Positions 28,333 through 46,590 are shown, numbered from the stretch's first letter. The stretch is DNA of 64,000 bases from Anthoceros angustus (GCA_010909165.1 MU008163.1:930001-994000), one strand, 5' to 3'. Translations and numbers: made by a program. Notes: generated by a model not told the origin, from the sequence alone.

Positions 28333-30380
28333 TCATCTCTCCCTTACCACAAAAATGTGCACGAGCCCGTCTATGCCTACCCACCAGCTCTGGCCTGGCT
28401 GTTTCCATGCCCCGATTGCTTTCCTCCTCGTCTGCAGCTTCTGTGCCTCCTCCCACATCTCATCACTGAGGTATATGTTGGACATCAACACATAGGCTGC
28501 AGCATCCTTGTCATGCAGCTTCAGTGCTTCGTTGAAGGCATGGAGTCCCACCTCCACGTTGCTCCACTTTTGACAGGCACCCAAAAGTGTGTGCCAGACT
28601 GCGGTGTCGGGGAGTACAGGCATGCTCCTTGCCATCCCTAGAGCCTCGTGGAGGTGGCCTGCACGACCCAGGATGTCCACCATGCACGTGTAGTGCTCCA
28701 TGGTGGGAGTGATGCCATAGTGTTGGCTCATTGCCTCGAAGTACTCTCGCCCCTTGTCCACAAGGCCTGCATGACTGCATGCTTTCAGAACGCTGAGAAA
28801 TGTGATGCTGTCCGGCCGTACGCTCTGCTCTTGCATTCTGCAAAGCAGGTGGAAGACTGTTTCGCTGTCCCCTTGCCGGGAGTATCCTGCAATCAGTGCA
28901 TTCCAGGCGACACTGTCTGCTTCAGGCAACCCATCAAATACCTGATGAGCATCCACCATGCTCCCAGACTTCGCATACATGTTTATCAAACTGATGGCTA
29001 CAAACGGGTCTGCCTGATGCCCCTGTTCTTCGATCTGAACATGCAGCCACCTTCCCGGATGCAACGCTGCTACATCCGCACATGCCTGCAGGAGGCAGGC
29101 AAACGTTACAGAATCCGAGCAGAAATGCCTTCATCTCGCATGGCTCTGTAAACACGAAGAGCTTCATGGCCCATCCCCTGCTGGCAGTATCCCGCCATCA
29201 TGGCATTCCATGTCACCAACGTTTTCCGAGCAAGCCGGGCAAATACAGCCCGAGCATCCTCGATGCTGCCACACTTTGCATACATGTTCACCAGGCTGCA
29301 CCCTACAACCGCATCACCCAGCAGCCCCTTGACATCAATCTGAGCATGGAGCTCCTTCCCTGCCTCCAAACCCCCGGCACCCACGCTCGTACACGCCTGC
29401 AGGAGGCTCACAAACGTCACAGAAGTGGGTGCAGCCAGGCCCTCTTCCTTCATAGCCCTGTAGAGATGAAGTGCTTCTTCACCCCTGCCCTGCTGGGCAT
29501 ATCCTGTTATCATGGCATTCCATGACACCGCATCTTTGCTACCAAGCCCATCAAAAACTCTCCTGGCATCATCCCAGCTGCCACACTTTGCGTACATGTC
29601 CACCAGGCAATTCACAACAAACAAGTCAGGCTCAACCCCACAAGCCATGACATCAGCATGCACCTGCCGCCCAGTTCTCAAGTCTGCTTCCCTGCCACAA
29701 GCCTGCAACGCTGCTACATACACATGCCCATCCGGCTCCACACCCGACCTGCGCATCTGACGATACAAGGCTATGCCCTGCTCACCTTGCCCGTGTTTAA
29801 CATGGGCAGAAATCATAGAAGACCACATGAAGACATCTGGCTCAGCCACCACTGTGAAGACATGCATGGCTTCCTCCAACATGCCATGAGAAGCATACAT
29901 CCGGAGGATGTGGTTACACAGGAACGTATCCGATCCATACCCCTTCTGCACTGCCAGAGCATGCACCCGGCGACCCAGAACCAGCTCCCTCTTCCCCACA
30001 CAGTTTCTCAGGACAGCGTAGATAAGAGACTGCGAAACAAGACATCCAGCCTGCACCAGGGCTCCCAGAGCCTCAACAGCCGGCGCCACGCAAACGTGCC
30101 CTTGCTCGCAGAATTTGCTCACTGTCTCGGCACTTACGCCGGGACAGTCCGGCGATGTAGAAGCCAACGATTCGCAACCTGTGCCCGCAAGACCTGTGAT
30201 GCCAGCAGTCCGTGTTTGCAGGGCCCAGAAAAGCCGTTCCCACAAGAGGAGGTGTGAATGAAGTGCGAGGCTCCTGGCAGCCAAGGTGGGCACAGGAATG
30301 CGCCAAGCCTGTGTAGGCAAGCCTGAACCCACAAACCAACTCCAACGCTCCAGCTGGGCCCATGCTATCCATCTCCGCAT
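28333..30380 (-). CDS. PLS/E-class PPR protein, copy 2 (best-preserved copy; one frameshift near 29115, possibly a sequencing error)
   Basis: ORFs 29106-30380 and 28333-29064 give a transit-peptide-like N-terminus, multiple P/L/S repeats and an E/E+ region. Copy 1 has an extra base at the corresponding site. No DYW domain seen. Confidence 0.85.
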
Positions 30381-30768: not shown

Positions 30769-31730
<962 letters not shown>

Positions 31731-32819: not shown

Positions 32820-32851
32820 CCCTAACCCCTAACCCCTAACCCCTAACCCCC
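32820..32851. repeat. Telomere-like (CCCCTAA)n tract, about 4 units
   Basis: ccctaacccctaacccctaacccctaacccc. Confidence 0.8.
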
Positions 32852-33180
32852 TTGAGACATATCCTAGGTGCAGGTTTGAAATTCCCAGAAACAACACGAT
32901 TATATAACCAAAGAGAATAAGCTGCGCCTAGAATCATCCCGAGTGCCGTTAATGTGGCCACTAAGCTATTTCTTTAGAAAGCTCCGATTAGGATAGGAGA
33001 TTCCCCGGATAGGAGATTCCCCGATGAAGCTGCTACTACCCGGTGAACTCATATTCGCTAAAGTAAAAAATAAGGAAATGGTACGGAAATGGGAAGGAAA
33101 TGGTATGGATGCGCACCTTAGGCCTCAGCTTCTTGAGCTGAGTCTACAGTGGAGTTGTATGGCGAAGCGAATCGCTTAGC

Positions 33181-34597
33181 CCACTTATTTGGTTGTTTCG
33201 CTTTCGAAATAGTCTTCACTAGGGTAAAGGTTACCCTTCGAACATAGGTTATCACCTGCTTACCGCTTCTACATGACTTTTCCCGAGCCTTCCTTTTTCA
33301 CTGAAGGTTCCAAGACCTTAACAGCTTCGGCCGTGGGAAACAAATATGAAATTAGCTAGGTAAATGAGCGCTTCCCACTTCTGCTTCAAGACCAATGGAA
33401 AATTACGAATTTTGATCAGAATTGGAAAGCACATGGTGGAGGGCAGAGCCATTGGCGAGCAAAAGAGGGCCTAAAGGAATAAAACTTGTTTTCTGAGCCC
33501 TTCCTCGGGGATTTCCGCCTTAACTTAAGTGGAGGCGGTTGCTTCGCTATGGCATGGCTACACCGTAACCTTAGTTCTGCGAAAGCTTCACCTGAGCACT
33601 AGCTCAAGATAGGTTTTAAGAAAAACCCAGCAAGCTGACAACCATAGACCACGTTGTGACACGGGCAAACACTGCTATGATATATCGTTTGTAAAACTTC
33701 CTCCTCGACTTGGCTCACTCTAGCTCAAGTGGGTTACCCAAGCCGCCGTCCAACCTTCTCTCCTTACCCTTACTATAATAAGCTAAGCACGTTTAACATA
33801 GTGTATTTTACTTGCTAGGAGGAGGGCTGGGTACTCACGCGTTAAGGGTGCTTCCTCTCCTCCCAAGCCCTGTGGTAGGGAAGTTCAAAATGCTACAGAG
33901 CTTAGGAAGTTCGTCACATTTGCAAACTTAGTGGGTTGACAAATGTGACTAACTCTCGCTCTCGTGTAGTTATTAGTTTAGTTAACAAATTTAGTTTTAT
34001 GTTAAGACTAGCCAAGTTTTCGCTAACGGTTTTAGTAAGGAAAACCATAAGCATTTTCTCGTTTTTCTCTTTATTATTTAATACCATCTAGCCACTGGAT
34101 TAACTTCCCTCCCTACATATGTCTATTAACTCTTTGTACATACTTCCAAACAAAGCTTAGCTATGCTAGTGTGTTGTTCTACTAAGAGGAACACCAGGTT
34201 TGGCCAAATGAAAGCACAGTTCTATGAACTAAATAGAACATTGAGCTTAGCAGTGAAAGCCCACAAGTTTTTCTTTTTTAGATTAGAATGGCTTTTTCCA
34301 CAAGTTTTATTCCTTGAGGCCCTCTTTTGCTCGCCAATAGCTCTGCCCTCCACCATGTGCTTTTCAATTCTGATCAAAATTCGTAATTTTCCATTGGTCT
34401 TGAAGCAGAAGTGGGAAGCGCTCATTTACCTAGCTAATTTCATATTTGTTTCCTGACATTGGTCTTGGAACCTTCAGTGAAAAAGGAAGGCTCGGGAAAA
34501 CTCATGTAGAAGGGGTAAGCAGGTGATAACCTATGTTCGAAGGGTAACCTTTACCCTAGTAAAGACTATTTCGAAAGCGAAACAACCAAATAAGTGG
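33181..34597. repeat. Long inverted repeat with arms 33181-33488 and 34301-34597 and an 810-bp spacer
   Basis: The right arm is the reverse complement of the left with few mismatches and one short indel. No TSD found. Confidence 0.92.
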
Positions 34598-36589
34598 AGT
34601 TAGAGAGCCGTATGATAGGTAACTATCTCTTATGGTTCGGAGAGGACTCCATTGTTCTGATAAGTTATTGGGGAATGGTTTCCTTAGCTTCTCCTTCTGG
34701 AGGGAGGAGCTGAGGCCTGGAAGCTGGGGCCGGAATGGGGAGCCGTGGCGTGCATCTCATATCTGCCCATCCATGGAGAGGTGCTCCAATTCCCGCCCCT
34801 GCTTTCAAATCTTGTTCGGGGTCGGCTTCAAGCGTGGCCATGCCAGCGTGGTGCTACCCGTAGCGGGATCATCAATGGATTGCTCAGGAAAGGGATGTCT
34901 CCATTGCACCAGGCTGAAGTCATGCACCCTGTGTGCGAATCCCGGAGTTTTACTCAAGTGCTATTCTCGAGGCAGAGAGGGAGCGCTGGCAGACGAGGCT
35001 CCCCGTCTGCTGGCATCGTGTGAGGACCTAGACTAGCAAGCGCGGGTTGGTGAAGAGGCCGAGCACCAGGCTTAGTTAGGGCTTCTGAAGTTTGTCCGGC
35101 CGGCCAGCTGAAATTTCCCGTTCCTGGCACTCGCATCCTGTCAGGACATCGACTACTGTAGTCCGCGATGCTTTGCACTATTGGGCTGGTTTCTTGATAG
35201 TGAAACTGGTTTTGCAGTTAAGCTTTTGCAACCCGTATGAGCATCATATCTCAATAATTCAGGGGAGATAATATATTTCCAGATGTCGCGGCTTATGGTC
35301 ATCAACCTCCGATGGTTAAGAGTGGGAGTTTTTGGTCTTCTAATTAGTACCTATATTTATGAACCGGAAAATAGGCGAAATTGGTTTCAAGGTCAAAATG
35401 GGTTTATCAGCAAATATGGGTTGAGTAGCTTTGGCATCGGTCCTTTGCAGCAGTCACCGCTTTGACTAGCTCATATGTCAAGATACACTCACGTTTCCTG
35501 GATAGAGTGAGGGATGCCACACATTCATGTCGAAGAACACCTTCAACCAGTGTGACCCCTGCACAACCCTGATACGAAGCACAAAATGACCGAATCTGAG
35601 ATACAATATGTTCCTTCAGAAATGACATGGAATCTAAATAGCCTTGAGTAGATCGGGCCAGTATATCTATGTAGCAACCCACTTGAGCATTAAATTCCAC
35701 AAAGATATCCAGGGACTCTGCAGATAATGAAAGGACATTAGGCTCTAGTTTCATTCCTGAATCAATTGGTCTTTCCTCATCAACCCAGCCTTTTGTCAAA
35801 CAATATGTGTATAAAAGTGCCTACAATGTATAGGAATAATGAGACTAGTTAATAGTCAATAATAATAATAATAAAAGAATAAGTTTCCAAGGACATAAAA
35901 CAAAAGGTATTCGGCTTGAGAAAAGTTACGAACCTGTAACCTAGGAAAAAAATCCTTGTGTGAGGAATGTACAATCTTGATTATGACATTGTAGACGCAA
36001 ACCCATAAAGACATAATCATGATGATTACCGTGTGAAGGTCATTCTAACTATTGATTAACTCATGACATGAATGTGTGGATTTCATTCTTTATACCTACA
36101 TATTGGAACAAAATAATGCACTTGTCCTTCTTCATCTATACTTTCGTAGCAAAGGTGCAACTCAAGCATCCATTGGATGAATTGTTCCTCGTTCACAATA
36201 GTTTCATCAAGCCCTACCTTTTTCATAGACATTTTTATGCACACTACACGCAGTCTTGGAAAGCTATCTTCAACAGCGGCACCCAGGGCTCTGCACTCAT
36301 TTTAAAGGCCAACAAAGAGTTTGCAACCGTGGTGGATGGTCATGTTATTTTGGGACAAAACGAGGACCTTGCCAGAGCCGAAGCAAAGTTCCAAGGTTCG
36401 AAGCTCTTAATCCTGTGAATAGTCTATATGTTTTGCTAGCCTTCTTCTACACATGTAGTTTTTCAATATCATTACACAAGTAGGCCGTTTCTTGCAAACT
36501 CTGAGGCTGTACTTGTTGCAGGATCGAAATCCAGCAGCAGCTTCTCTCCTGAAACTCCTACATAGCTATCCTCGCAAGTAGTAAAGGCT

Positions 36590-37389
36590 GTGCAGAAAGA
36601 ACAACATGTTGCTGTGAGTAGTTATCCTAACCATAGTGTGGAAGTAGGCAAACAGAGAGGTTTGGTAGTGATTGTGAGCATGGAAGAGGATAGACCTGGA
36701 GGAGCTGTAGACCTTGGGCGACCTCAAGCTCTTTTTGAGCCTTTGGCATTTCGTACTAAGATATTAGTGGACTGTTCTGAGGATGTCAAAGCAAGTTTTA
36801 GGAGCATTGCCAGACAAACTGCCCTAGTTGATGACGATTGCTTTATGTGTTGCATCAATGCTCATGGGGGGATTGAAGAAGATGGTAGACAGTACATTCT
36901 CACAAGTGGAGCACGCCGGGAGAAGCTATATGTTGATGATGATATCTTGAAGCCCATCTCTGAATCCACGGGGCTGAGAGACAAGCCCAAGGTATTTCTA
37001 ATCAATGCTTGTAGAGGCACAGGTAGCCTTATCACAAGAGAAAGCTGAGGACTCTGAAGTTGAGAGTAGCCAAATTGTGAGCAAGAGAGTCGGAGAAGTC
37101 CAACTCCTGCATTCTGAGAAGGATTGTCTCATCTTCCTCTTGACGAGTCATGGACAACAATCCTTCAAAGATACCGAGAAACACACACACTTTATCACAA
37201 CTATGATGAACACGATCACTAAAGGGGTCTCGAAAAAGGGATGATGTGTACAGCATTTTAACATTAGTGATTGCCGAGGTCACGGAGATAGAAGTCAGGC
37301 TCCCAAGCGAAGCAGGAAGGCGCTCTAAGAAGAGATCCCAGTGTCCAGAGTTGTACTCCATACTCACAAGAAAGCTTTGCTGGTCTTAA
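36590..37389 (+). CDS. Caspase-like cysteine protease domain (peptidase C14, p20+p10), with two frameshifts as assembled
   Basis: RGLVVIVS, DRPGGAVD, LFEPLAF, DCFMCCINAHG (His codon 36863), KPKVFLINACRG (Cys codon 37010). p10-like DCLIFLLTSHGQQSFKDTEKHTHFITTM and C-terminal QCPELYSILTRKLCW*. Confidence 0.82.
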
Positions 37390-42547: not shown

Positions 42548-44121
42548 CTAGAGCACTGCCACGGCCATGGCTGCCAAACCGGCTCCAAAGAGCACGCCGA
42601 ATGAGGCCCTAACAGAGCCCGCGGCACTGGGGTGGCGGGGTCGGGCAGCCGGAGGAGGGGCGGGGCCTCCTGGGCGCCGGAGGAGGCGCGGTGCTGGCGG
42701 GAGGAGGGACGGAGGGGGTCGTTGTGGGTGGAGGAGTCGAAGTCGGGGAGTGGAGGGAGGAGAGGCTGGAGGAGTGGTGGGAGGAGTGGAAGGTGTGGTG
42801 GGAGGAGAGGCAGGTGGGGTGGAGGAGGAAGGTGGTGGGAGGAGTGGAAGGCGTGGTGGGAGGAGTGGACGGTGCGATGGGAGGAGAGGAAGGTGAGGTG
42901 GGAGGAGTGGAAGGTGCGACGGGAGGAGGAAGGTGCGGTGGGAGGAGATGCTGGGGAAGTCGGGGAGAGGCCGGTGAGGTGGGAGGCGAGGCCGGAGTAG
43001 TCGGAGGTTCAGTTGGCTCCTGGCCTGGGAAGGCGGGGAGATGTGGGAGCCAGAGGCGGGGAAACGGGAGGGAATGGAGAAGGCCCAGGAGTCGACGATG
43101 AAGGAGGAGTGGCGGAATTGAAGGAGGAGTTGCTGGGGGTCAACGGGGTGTTGAAGGAGGTGTTGAAGGAGGAGTTGATGGAGGAGTAGCCGGAGGAGCT
43201 GCAGGAGGAGTTGAAGGAGGCGGACCAGGAGTTGTAGGGGAGTTGAAGGAGGAGTTGCTGGAGTGGAGGGAGGAGAGGCAGGGGCGATGGCGGAGATGCA
43301 AGAGGAGGAACGCCTGCCGGGGAGAAGGAGGAGGGATGAAGTAGTCGGAGGGGGATGAAGTTGTCGGAGGAGGGGTTGAGGTAGTCGGAGGAGGGGATGA
43401 AGTAGTCGGAGGGGGGGATGAAGTTGTCGGAGGAGGGGACGAGGTAGTCGGAGGAGGGGATGAAGTTGTAGGAGGAGGGCTAGCACCTCCGCCGGAAGCC
43501 GCAGCAACAACAGCTGAAAAATGCATCATGGGACAATGTCCGGGCACGCCACAGGTGAAGTAGGTAGTGCCTGCGGCCAGGGTGACGGCGTCATTCCCAG
43601 TATTGTAGGTGGCCGTCGGAGAAGCTACTATGCAGCCCGTGAAATCATCCAGACTCCCCAGGGTAATCACGTCGTGCTGGCCCTTAGTATACTTGAACGC
43701 TACGGGAACCACAACGACCGATCAGGAAAAACAACACAATACAACACAACACAGACGAAGAAGAAAGCCAGCTCCCGTGACAACAACAACACAAAACCCC
43801 CAAACTCCGGAGAGAAAAATGCAATGCAGCTCCCGAGTTGACATCAAAATGCACACAGGCTCAGTAGAAAAAACGCAGTGGTCACAGCAGAACAAAAACA
43901 ACAGCCGTCTGCTCAAACTCACTGATCGTGTCCCCGGCCACGAACGTGGTACTGTCAGCCCAGGTCTGATAATCGCCGAAGCCCCAGGTCCCGTCCCCGC
44001 CGGCCGGGTGGTCGGTGGCGCTGCCGCATTGCAGGAACGCGAGGAGCGTGAGGAGCACGGCTGCCGCCGCTGGCGACGCACTGCCCCTTCCCTGCGTCGT
44101 CCGCGACCTGGAGTCCGCCAT
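42548..44121 (-). CDS. Phytocyanin (uclacyanin-like) with a long Pro/Thr/Ser stalk and GPI signal. Exon 1 44121-43923, exon 2 from 43699
   Basis: Signal peptide, WADSTTFVAGDTI|FKYTKGQHDV...TYFTCGVPGHCPMM with candidate H/C/H/M copper ligands, PPPTTSS repeats and a hydrophobic C-terminus. Frame slips occur inside the repeats. Confidence 0.9.
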
Positions 44122-44759: not shown

Positions 44760-46590
44760 TTGCTGTTGGAGTTGTGTGGGGAACAAAATCCTTGCATGTG
44801 TGCTTCACGGTTTCAATCTGGAGATGGCGTCATCTCCCATACCACAAAAACGTGCACCAGCCCGTCGATGCCTACCCACCAGCTCTGGCCTGGCTGTTTC
44901 CATGCCCCGTTTTCTCTCCTCCTCGTCTGCAGCTTCTGTGCCTCCTCCCACATCTGAGCACTGAGACATATGTTGGACATCAACACATAGGCTGCAGCAT
45001 CCTGGTCATGCAGCTTCAGTGCTTCGTTGAGGGCATGGAGTGGGATCCCACCTTCACGTTGCTCCACTTTTGACAGGCACCCAAAAGTGTGTGCCAGACT
45101 GCGGTGTCGGGGAGTACAGGCATGCTCCTTCCCACCCCTAGAGCCTCGTGGAGGTGGCCTGCATACCCAGGATGTCCACCATGCACGTGTAGTTCTCCAT
45201 GGTGGGAGTGATGCCATACTGCTGGCTCATTGCCTCGAAGTACTCTCGCCCCTTGTCCACACGGCCTGCATGACTGCATACTTTCAGAACGCTAAGAAAT
45301 GTGATGCCTTGGGCTGTATGCTCTGCTCTTGCATTCTGCAATGCAGGGTGAAGACCATTTTGGTGTCCCCTTGCCGGGTGTATCCTGCAATCAGTGCATT
45401 CTAGGCGACCGTGTCTGGTTCAGGCAATCCTTCAAACACCTGCTGTGCACACCATGCTCCCATACATGTTTATCAAACTGATGGCTACAAATGGGTCTGT
45501 ATGAAGCCCCTGTTCTTCGATCTGAACATGCCTTCATCTCGCATGGCTCTGTAAACAAAAAGAGCTTCCTGGCCCATCCCCTGTTGGCAGTATCCCGCCA
45601 TCATGGCATTCCATGTAACCAACGTTTTCCGACCGAGCCGGGCAAACACACCCCGAGCATCCTCGATGCTGCCGCACTTTGCATACATGTTCACCAGGCT
45701 GCACCCTATAACCGCATCAACCAGCAGCCCCTTCGCATCAATCTGAGCATGGAGCTCCTTCCCTGCCTCCAAACCCCCAGCACCCACGCTCGCACACGCC
45801 TGCAGGAGGCTCACAAACATCACAGACGTAGGTGCAGCCGCGCCCTCTTCCTTCATAGCCCTGTAGAGATGAAGTGCTTCTTCACCCCTGCCCTGCTGGG
45901 CATATCCTGCTATCATGGCATCTCATGACACCGCAACTTTCCTACCAAGCCCATCAAAAACTCTCTTACCATCATCCAAGCTGCCACACTGTGCGTACAT
46001 GTCCACCAGGCAATTCACAACAAACAAGTCAGGCTCGACCCCACAAGCCATGACATCAGCATGCACCTGCCGCCCCCACACTCGACCTGCGCATCTGACG
46101 ATACAAGGCTATGCCCTGCTCACCTTGCCCATGTTTAACATGGGCAGAAATTATGGAAGACCACATGAAGACATCTGGCTTAGCCACCACCTTCAACATC
46201 CCACGAGAAGCATACATCCGATCCATGCCCCTTCTCCACTGCCAGAGCATGCACCCGGCGACCCAGAACCAGCTCCCTCTTCTCCCACACAGTTTCTCAG
46301 GACAGCGTAGAGAAGAGACTGCGAAACAAGACATCCAGTCTGCACCAGGGCTCCCAGAGCCTCAACAGCCACACAAACGTGCCCTTGCTCGCAGAATTCG
46401 CTCACTGCCTTGCCCGCAATTTGTGTTTGCGGGGTACAGAACAGCGGTTGGCCCAAGAGGCAGTGTGAATGAAGTGCACTGCTCCGGGCAGCCAAGGTGG
46501 GCACGGGAATGCGCCAAGCATGTGCAGGCAAGCCCGAACTCACAACCCAACTTCAACCCTCCAGCTGGGCCCATACTGCCCATCTCCGCA
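44760..46590 (-). pseudogene. PLS/E-class PPR gene, copy 3 (more diverged, with deletions and frameshifts)
   Basis: Colinear with copies 1 and 2, e.g. GLEAGKELHAQIDAKGLLVDAVIGCSLVNMYAKCGSIEDAR and WHTLLGACQKWSN. Confidence 0.88.

What the first reader, a model, noticed from the sequence alone, without database searches (positions are those of the whole stretch)
36522..37389. Animal-type caspase-like (p20+p10) gene embedded in plant DNA
Seen in the sequence: after bridging two indels (a +1 shift near 37015-37045 and one in the A5G3 run at 37233-37240), the region encodes a complete caspase fold. The motifs are RGLVVIVS, DRPG, LFEPLAF..ILVDCS, DCFMCCINAHG, KPKVFLINACRG, an acidic linker (AEDSEVES), then DCLIFLLTSHGQQSFKDTEKHTHFITTMMNTI and QCPELYSILTRKLCW*. 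Established knowledge: human caspase-8 has PRGYCLIIN, DRNG, DCFICCILSHG and KPKVFFIQACQG, and caspase small subunits have DFL..YST..GY.SWR....GSWFIQ.L. Plant metacaspases instead carry a D(A/S)CHSG nucleophile motif and an acidic S1 pocket for Arg/Lys. Inference: the His-Cys dyad is intact, and the positions forming the basic Asp-binding S1 pocket hold R (36692), N (for Q, 37004) and K (for R, 37167). This predicts Asp-directed specificity, whereas land plants are generally described as lacking true caspases. The domain is intronless and lies between clearly plant genes (RPS13, EG45-like), so horizontal acquisition or an overlooked lineage-specific family is plausible. I cannot tell whether homologues are already catalogued.
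Basis: partly seen in the sequence, partly recalled or inferred. Interest (0 to 1): 0.93.

Follow-up and report, generated by a model that had tools for sequence, protein, structure and literature searches.

The report
Dead caspase-type gene relic in plant
This stretch of plant DNA does encode a protease domain of the animal caspase type, which plants are usually said to lack, but this copy is a broken, rearranged leftover of a larger receptor-like gene.

Summary
Window 36596-37389 (+) encodes a complete caspase-type (Peptidase_C14, p20+p10) domain spread over three reading frames. A family profile built without this sequence matches it from end to end at 208 bits. The nearest solved structures, by sequence and by fold of an intact relative, are all animal caspases, with no metacaspase among those shown.

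It is neither a contaminant nor a recent transfer from an animal. It sits among plant genes and groups in a well-supported clade with liverwort proteins that UniProt already labels 'Caspase family p20 domain-containing protein'.

The family keeps the caspase pocket as Arg/Asn/Arg. This copy has Arg/Asn/Lys.

This copy is dead as assembled:
- two frameshifts;
- an in-frame TAG at 36563;
- a roughly 0.85-kb inversion that flips the COR-like exons which sit directly upstream of the caspase in relatives;
- no Roc or LRR part detected upstream.

The one public run available could not check the assembly, and no RNA run was listed.

Earlier notes of this scan report LRR-Roc-COR-caspase genes, some said to be intact and expressed, elsewhere in this genome. 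This locus is therefore another, decayed, member of that set. I found no paper describing the plant family.

The parts
35265..35441 (+). Weak match to the N-terminal part of a COR-A-like region. This is the left flank of the inversion.
   Evidence: tblastn with the product upstream of P0007 (L002:2-610), residues 1-62, E 0.005. That product has a weak Pfam COR-A hit, E 0.015.
35455..35799 (-). COR-B-like exon, inverted relative to the caspase. Homology stops after ELVKAV, about nt 35455. The ORF runs on to a stop at 35407.
   Evidence: tblastn with P0007 residues 1-66, E 1.6e-12, 39% identity. P0006 gives E 5.8e-8 and P0013 gives E 5e-4, all on the minus strand. Alignment A1. Coordinates.
36086..36244 (-). 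C-terminal part of the COR-A-like region (motif EQFIQWMLELHLCYE...YFVP), inverted.
   Evidence: Motif-level alignment A3 to L002 and L003 upstream products (DQLIxLMxxLDLCYK...Y.VP), 25-30% identity. BLASTP alone found nothing, so this rests on motifs.
35445..36275 (.). Inferred inverted segment of about 0.85 kb. Breakpoints are approximate.
   Evidence: In homologue coordinates the order is COR-A N-part, COR-A C-part, COR-B, linker, caspase. In the window the two middle blocks are reversed in both order and strand.
36281..36395 (+). Linker exon between COR-B and the caspase (TQGSALILKANKEFATVVDGHVILGQNEDLARAEAKFQ).
   Evidence: Alignment A4 to P0007 and P0006 linkers, 28-29% identity. Same frame (2) as the caspase after splicing.
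36396..36521 (+). Putative GT..AG intron (AAG|GTTCGA ... TTGTTGCAG|GA). It is the only one of the donor/acceptor pairs tried that keeps frame 2.
   Evidence: Read from the sequence. Inference only, with no RNA evidence.
36563..36565 (+). In-frame TAG between the linker and the caspase domain.
   Evidence: Frame-2 translation.
36596..37021 (+). p20 part of the caspase-type domain (frame 2). Pocket Arg at 36692-36694, catalytic His (AHG) at 36863-36865, Asn at 37004-37006, catalytic Cys (NACRG) at 37010-37012.
   Evidence: Pfam PF00656 E 6.3e-10. Caspase-8 E 3.3e-7 with alignment. Family profile positions 5-141, 146 bits.
37021..37045 (+). First +1 frame change (frame 2 to frame 0), just after ACRG. 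It is not in a homopolymer.
   Evidence: ORF list and three-frame translation. The only GT..AG pair here spans 22 nt, too short for an intron.
37023..37241 (+). Inter-subunit linker and first half of p10 (frame 0). Lys 37167-37169 stands where caspases and the family have Arg. HTHF stands where the family has GTYF.
   Evidence: Pfam PF00656 E 4.6e-4. Caspase-4 p10 alignment. Family profile positions 150-213. Alignment.
37233..37240 (+). Second +1 frame change (frame 0 to frame 1), in an A5G3 run.
37237..37389 (+). Second half of p10 (frame 1), DDVYSILT ... QCPELYSILTRKLCWS, with the stop at 37387-37389.
   Evidence: Family profile positions 216-255, 18.5 bits. Alignment to Marchantia C-termini QCPVIHSSLKKRLSW.

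Best explanation
Window 35265-37389 is the decayed 3' end of a former multi-domain gene of the type '...COR-A, COR-B, linker, caspase-type protease'. It belongs to a caspase-type family shared with liverworts.

The protease domain is a true structural and sequence relative of animal caspases. It has a p20/p10 layout, an AHG/NACRG dyad and a basic S1 pocket, which is Arg/Asn/Arg in intact relatives.

Shown, taking the assembly as given: this copy cannot make the protein. An in-frame TAG precedes the domain. Two +1 frame changes split it into three frames. A roughly 0.85-kb inversion has turned the COR-A C-part and COR-B exons onto the opposite strand. No Roc GTPase or LRR part was detected upstream. 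One pocket Arg has become Lys and the conserved GTxF has become HTHF.

Inferred: in intact family members the domain would be a cysteine protease activated by proximity or dimerisation, driven by the attached switch module (Roc-COR here, alpha/beta-hydrolase in Marchantia, possibly NB-ARC-LRR in another relative). It would cut after acidic residues, as a death or immune effector.
For: - Domain identity: Pfam PF00656; family profile built without the window row, 208 bits over positions 5-255 of 264.
- PDB sequence searches list only animal caspases among those shown; profile search, E 1e-37 over the full length.
- AlphaFold model of the intact relative P0004 has pLDDT 86. Its top 50 Foldseek PDB matches are all caspases, TM 0.7-0.8.
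- Family placement: a 24-row clade with SH-aLRT 98 that includes Marchantia polymorpha, M. paleacea and Riccia fluitans proteins.
- Pocket residues.
- COR context and inversion: P0006, P0007 and P0013 carry the COR-B-like region and the caspase in one ORF. The window matches the former on the minus strand (E 1.6e-12) and the latter on the plus strand (E 2e-19). The flanking pieces fit the same order.
- Breaks.
- Plant context.
- Many contigs 90-95% alike in a run that also holds near-identical pieces indicate a multi-copy family.
Against: - The assembly could not be checked. The only run offered holds short contigs, mostly of paralogues, and none is shown to bridge the breaks or the inversion junctions.
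- The second frame change lies in a homopolymer, which is typical of long-read error. Earlier scan notes say RNA reads another such locus intact.
- The p20 half is very well conserved, dyad included, so the decay would have to be recent.
- Two blocks of the inversion model rest on weak similarity: the COR-A N-part at E 0.005 and the COR-A C-part by motifs only.
- The search for Roc and LRR used only two relatives about 30% identical, so its sensitivity is limited.
- The mechanism proposed for the family is entirely inferred.
Confidence: 0.8

Rival explanations
1. The gene is intact in the organism. The frameshifts, and perhaps the stop and the inversion, are assembly errors, and the locus encodes a working COR-caspase or Roco-caspase protein.
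For: The second shift lies in an A5G3 run. A PPR gene in the same window is also split by a frame change. Earlier notes of this scan report frame-breaking gaps in other copies and RNA that reads one copy intact. The dyad and most p20 motifs are intact.
Against: The TAG at 36563 is a substitution, not an indel. The first shift is not in a homopolymer. The inversion is structural, with both junctions inside coding sequence. No Roc or LRR was found upstream. Arg-to-Lys and Gly-to-His changes sit at family-conserved positions. The RPS13 exons in the same window read cleanly.
Confidence: 0.1
2. The caspase sequence is animal contamination, a chimeric join, or a recent transfer from an animal.
For: The best named matches outside bryophytes are animal caspases.
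Against: The sequence lies inside one contig between plant genes, and its GC content (0.44) matches its surroundings. It clusters with liverwort proteins in a clade separate from all named animal caspases and shares at most 37-49% identity with anything in the databases. It is linked to a COR-like region, as in other family members. Paralogous contigs occur in a public run that also holds near-identical pieces.
Confidence: 0.02
3. It is a divergent metacaspase or another non-caspase C14 member.
For: Pfam PF00656 covers both caspases and metacaspases.
Against: The nucleophile motif is NACRG and the His motif is AHG. There is no D(A/S)CHSG. The pocket positions are basic or neutral, not acidic. 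The 60 PDB matches shown in each sequence search and the 50 best fold matches are all caspases.
Confidence: 0.01

Closest known systems
Animal caspases (MEROPS C14A; caspase-6, -8 and -3 are the best matches)
   Same: Same p20/p10 fold with full-length profile alignment (E 1e-37) and fold match at TM 0.7-0.8. His-Gly and x-A-C-R-G dyad motifs. Arg and Arg at the two basic pocket positions in intact family members. C-terminal Q.P...S.LT.KL.W motif.
   Different: Asn replaces the pocket Gln (NACRG, a family-wide feature). There is no CARD, DED or pyrin prodomain. The domain is joined to COR-like, alpha/beta-hydrolase or possibly NB-ARC modules. It occurs in land plants. This copy is broken and has Lys for one pocket Arg. 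Cleavage specificity is untested.
Liverwort 'Caspase family p20 domain-containing proteins' (e.g. Marchantia polymorpha MARPO_0108s0037 / Mp_6g00900, M. paleacea Mapa_003498, Riccia fluitans R1flu_002472, R. sorocarpa R1sor_005450)
   Same: Same clade (SH-aLRT 98) with the same motifs. The caspase domain sits at the C-terminal end of a larger protein.
   Different: The partner domain is an alpha/beta hydrolase, not COR. These are intact annotated genes, carry only automatic names, and I found no paper on them.
Bacterial LRR-AP-GTPase (Roc)-COR conflict-system proteins with variable C-terminal effectors that include caspase (Kaur, Iyer, Burroughs and Aravind 2021, PMC8195603)
   Same: The module order, with a COR domain followed by a C-terminal caspase effector. 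The logic is a nucleotide switch gating a death effector.
   Different: These are prokaryotic. I did not test any sequence relationship between their caspase domains and this family. Only the COR-like and caspase parts survive in this window.
Plant metacaspases (C14B)
   Same: Same Pfam superfamily (PF00656), with a His-Cys dyad on a caspase-hemoglobinase fold.
   Different: Metacaspases carry D(A/S)CHSG, an acidic pocket and Arg/Lys specificity (established knowledge; PMC5756287). This domain has none of these motifs, and none of the PDB matches shown was a metacaspase.

Membership tests
Peptidase_C14 superfamily (PF00656) | Significant match to the Pfam model above its gathering score | tested here: met
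   p20 piece 39.6 bits against a cut-off of 21.4, E 6.3e-10. p10 piece 20.4 bits, just under the cut-off.
Caspases proper (C14A type) | Catalytic His in an x-H-G motif and Cys in a Q-A-C-x-G motif | tested here: met
   AHG (His at 36863-36865) and NACRG (Cys at 37010-37012), aligned to SHG and QACQG of caspase-8. Asn replaces Gln throughout the family.
Caspases proper (C14A type) | Basic S1 pocket (Arg179, Gln283, Arg341 in caspase-1 numbering) | tested here: inconclusive
   The window has Arg / Asn / Lys. Intact relatives have Arg / Asn / Arg. This is compatible with acidic P1 but is not the canonical triad.
Caspases proper (C14A type) | Closer to caspases than to metacaspases, paracaspases or orthocaspases in sequence and fold | tested here: met
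   The 60 best PDB sequence matches shown and the 50 best fold matches are caspases. Atlas look-alikes are animal caspase clusters. No rooted tree with outgroups was made.
Caspases proper (C14A type) | Cleavage after Asp | not testable with these tools
   Needs an enzyme assay on an intact paralogue.
Caspases proper (C14A type) | Uninterrupted coding sequence able to yield the enzyme | tested here: not met
   TAG at 36563, two +1 frame changes and an inverted upstream region, as assembled.
Metacaspases (C14B) | D(A/S)CHSG nucleophile motif and acidic S1 pocket | tested here: not met
   NACRG, with pocket positions Arg/Asn/Lys.
Roco proteins (Roc-COR) | Roc GTPase domain followed by COR | tested here: not met
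   Only COR-like fragments were found, and they are below Pfam significance. They were recognised through relatives. No Roc or LRR match appeared in the window with the upstream parts of L002 and L003. The relatives used are about 30% identical, so sensitivity is limited.
Bryophyte caspase-type family (liverwort 'Caspase family p20 domain-containing' proteins) | Placement in one supported clade with the named liverwort proteins, and shared motifs (SMEx..R.GG, INACRG, FSTxEGxxSxR, GTxFvqAL, Q.P...S.L.kkLyW) | tested here: met
   Clade of 24 rows with SH-aLRT 98. Profile score 208 bits, in the range of family members (above 200) and well above animal caspases (148 or less). Two motifs are degraded in the window (SFK for SxR, HTHF for GTxF).

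The most novel reading that the evidence does not exclude
This relic is one copy of an expanded family, turning over by duplication and decay, in which a nucleotide-switch module (Roc-COR) directly carries a caspase-type protease with an Arg/Asn/Arg pocket. If the intact paralogues are active and cut after Asp or Glu, land plants of the bryophyte grade do have true caspase-like death or immune proteases. These would be wired as single-chain 'sensor-switch-caspase' receptors, contrary to the textbook statement that caspases are restricted to animals.
Probability: 0.35. Interest if true: 0.85.

Novelty: new member of a known kind. Interest (0 to 1): 0.45.

Why it matters
Reviews state that caspases occur only in animals and that plants have only metacaspases (PMC5756287, PMC10896300; abstracts). 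This locus adds to the evidence that a caspase-type (C14A-like) domain family exists in bryophyte-grade plants. It also shows that in this genome the domain was attached to a COR module, the layout known from bacterial conflict systems.

The copy itself has no function as assembled. Its value is as a marker of family turnover through duplication, rearrangement and decay, which is typical of immune-receptor-like genes. It is also a warning that apparent 'complete' domains in this assembly need read-level checking. The biologically important tests belong to the intact paralogues and to the Marchantia genes, which are experimentally tractable.

Tried and rejected
- Sequencing-run search. Only one small run of 'DNA?' kind was offered (share of words 0.04), and no RNA run was listed. 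Laying it gave short contigs, mostly 90-95% alike and so paralogues. It settled none of the breaks.
- Exact-product look-up of the window ORF in public assemblies found nothing on record.
- Pfam on the minus-strand COR-like pieces and on nearby ORFs gave no significant hit. BLASTP of the COR-A C-part against relatives gave nothing, and only a motif-level alignment supports it.
- A short intron in place of the first frameshift was rejected. The only GT..AG pair spans 22 nt.
- An alternative splice that avoids TAG 36563 was rejected. Of the donor/acceptor pairs I tried, only 36395|36522 keeps the frame, and that form includes the TAG.
- A search for long multi-domain relatives using the Marchantia paleacea caspase region returned only liverwort hydrolase-caspase proteins and no named Roco-caspase.
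- Eight literature searches found no description of a plant caspase-type family, and no mention of the Marchantia gene identifiers.
- The metacaspase reading was rejected on motifs and on search results.
- I did not identify the organism. Run and organism names are coded. 'Hornwort' comes only from earlier scan notes.

Full report
**Observation.**
- ORF 36590-37048 (frame 2) contains RGLVVIVS, DRPG, DCFMCCINAHG and KPKVFLINACRG. It matches Pfam Peptidase_C14 at E 6.3e-10.
- The domain continues in frame 0 (37005-37244) and then in frame 1 (37237-37389, ending QCPELYSILTRKLCWS*).
- I built a profile from eleven relatives without the window row. The three pieces hit consecutive parts of it: positions 5-141 at 146 bits, 150-213 at 28 bits and 216-255 at 18.5 bits.
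- A read-through with X at the two breaks scores 208 bits over positions 5-255 of 264. The complete p20+p10 domain is therefore present, split by two +1 frame changes.
- The first change lies just after ACRG (37021-37045). The second lies in the A5G3 run at 37233-37240.
- TAG 36563 is in frame upstream of the domain.

**What kind of C14 domain it is.**
- phmmer of the p20 piece against all PDB sequences lists only animal caspases among the 60 matches shown, led by caspase-8 at E 3.3e-7.
- The family profile gives E about 1e-37 over the full length, again only caspases among the 60 shown.
- An intact relative, P0004, aligns to caspase-6 from end to end.
- Its AlphaFold model has mean pLDDT 86 and pTM 0.88. 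Its 50 best Foldseek PDB matches are caspases-3, -6, -7, -8 and -9 and CED-3, at TM 0.7-0.8.
- The ESM Atlas look-alikes of the window piece are chordate and arthropod caspase clusters.
- The nucleophile motif is NACRG, not the metacaspase D(A/S)CHSG.
- At the three pocket positions of caspases (Arg179, Gln283, Arg341), intact relatives have Arg, Asn, Arg. The window has Arg (36692), Asn (37004), Lys (37167).
- A basic pocket suggests an acidic P1 residue. That is inference and was not tested.

**Whose family it is.**
- Scoring all 1.84 billion representative proteins gave only 116 hits at E up to 1e-3. The best was 49% identical.
- The named members near the top are liverwort proteins. They include Marchantia polymorpha MARPO_0108s0037 / Mp_6g00900, which UniProt names 'Caspase family p20 domain-containing protein'. 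They also include M. paleacea Mapa_003498, Riccia fluitans R1flu_002472 and several R. sorocarpa proteins.
- In the Marchantia proteins scanned here the caspase domain follows an alpha/beta-hydrolase domain. Precomputed Pfam hits show the same hydrolase family in several Riccia sorocarpa relatives.
- In a tree of 105 domains, the window falls in a 24-row clade (SH-aLRT 98) with these liverwort proteins and several unnamed ones. All 14 named animal caspases lie outside it.
- The backbone of the tree is unresolved. The sample was chosen by similarity to the query and has no metacaspase outgroup. The tree therefore shows membership of a distinct clade, not its origin.
- Profile scores show the same gap: family members score above 200 bits and animal caspases 148 or less.

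**Context and state of this copy.**
- Three relatives from a Logan assembly (P0006, P0007, P0013) carry, in one ORF, a COR-B-like region, a linker and then the caspase. The product just upstream of P0007 has a weak COR-A hit.
- The window matches the caspase part on the plus strand (E 2e-19). It matches the COR-B-like part on the minus strand at 35512-35748 (E 1.6e-12) (alignment A1).
- In homologue coordinates the full order is COR-A N-part, COR-A C-part, COR-B, linker, caspase.
- In the window the order is:
  - COR-A N-part on the plus strand, 35265-35441 (weak, E 0.005);
  - COR-B on the minus strand, 35455-35799;
  - COR-A C-part on the minus strand, 36086-36244 (motif-level alignment only);
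  - linker on the plus strand, 36281-36395;
  - a putative intron, 36396-36521;
  - the caspase.
- Each block occurs once. The two middle blocks are reversed in both order and strand. This is what a single inversion of about 0.85 kb with both breakpoints in coding sequence would produce.
- No Roc or LRR match was found anywhere in the window with the upstream parts of the two relatives. Those relatives are only about 30% identical, so this is a weak negative.
- A foldback element of about 1.4 kb with 320-nt arms lies just upstream.
- Two family-conserved p10 features are degraded here: SxR has become SFK, and GTxF has become HTHF.
- Of the splice forms I tried, the only one that preserves the frame still contains TAG 36563.
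- As assembled, this is a dead, rearranged 3' fragment.

**Is the assembly right?** I could not test this.
- One public run was offered. It holds short contigs, of which 62 of 98 are only 90-95% alike, so mostly paralogues. None is shown to bridge the breaks. No RNA run was listed.
- What the run does show is that related sequences are multi-copy in that organism.
- The second frame change is in a homopolymer. A PPR gene in the window is also split by a frame change. Earlier notes of this scan say that RNA reads another copy intact. Some indels may therefore be errors.
- The TAG is a substitution, the first shift is not in a homopolymer, and the inversion is structural. The RPS13 exons nearby read cleanly.
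- I therefore put 0.8 on the relic reading and 0.1 on an intact gene hidden by assembly errors.

**Plant context.** The flanks hold PPR genes with an E motif, RPS13, a phytocyanin and an EG45-like gene. GC content is unremarkable. Contamination or a recent transfer from an animal is very unlikely.

**Comparison with what is known.**
- Reviews state that caspases are restricted to animals (PMC5756287, PMC10896300).
- I found no paper on a plant caspase-type family or on the Marchantia genes. NLR surveys of non-flowering plants that I checked mention caspases only for animals and bacteria.
- Kaur et al. 2021 (PMC8195603) describe bacterial LRR-AP-GTPase (Roc)-COR proteins whose variable C-terminal effector can be a caspase. 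That is the closest described architecture.
- I did not test whether the plant module derives from such systems.

**Relation to earlier scan findings.** Notes on other pieces of this genome already report LRR-Roc-COR-caspase genes, both broken and reportedly intact and expressed. They also report other fusions. I used them as leads. Here I independently confirmed the COR-caspase link and the liverwort relatives. I did not check their RNA evidence or the organism assignment.

**Verdict.** The domain is a real caspase-type domain and belongs to a family that databases catalogue but that has not been characterised. This copy is a pseudogene relic. Its interest lies at the family level, not in this locus.

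Noticed in passing
window 33172-33489 and 34300-34606: Inverted arms of about 320 nt, 95-98% complementary, bound a segment of about 1.4 kb. This is a foldback or long-TIR transposon-like element just upstream of the COR-caspase relic.
   Followed up: partly
window 32826-32850: A short interstitial run of four CCCTAA units, which resembles a telomere repeat.
   Followed up: no
window 28333-30380 (-) and 44813-46310 (-): A PPR gene with an E motif is split into two reading frames near 29064-29106, at a site that is not a homopolymer. A second copy about 15 kb away is far more fragmented. These are either pseudogenes or indel errors in the assembly. The RPS13 exons at 30912-31700 read cleanly.
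   Followed up: partly
L001:8001-16614 (JGI metagenome contig, 164 kb): The closest database relative, P0001 (49% identity), lies about 1 kb upstream of NB-ARC and LRR ORFs on the same strand. This may be a caspase-NB-ARC-LRR gene with introns.
   Followed up: no
L002:694-1977 (P0007, Logan SRR33208241): An otherwise intact COR-B-caspase ORF has SGHG where the family has ACRG. The catalytic Cys is lost, so this may be a pseudo-protease member.
   Followed up: no
window 36866-36871: In the only public run, four contigs (depth 271 of 356) lack one G in the G6 run directly after the catalytic His codon. They may be paralogues with their own frame break, or this may be an alignment or assembly artefact. 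It is unresolved.
   Followed up: no
window 42548-43712 (-): A phytocyanin-like gene (Cu_bind_like, E 2e-11) is followed by a long Pro/Ser/Thr-rich repeat region, as in arabinogalactan-type early-nodulin-like proteins.
   Followed up: no
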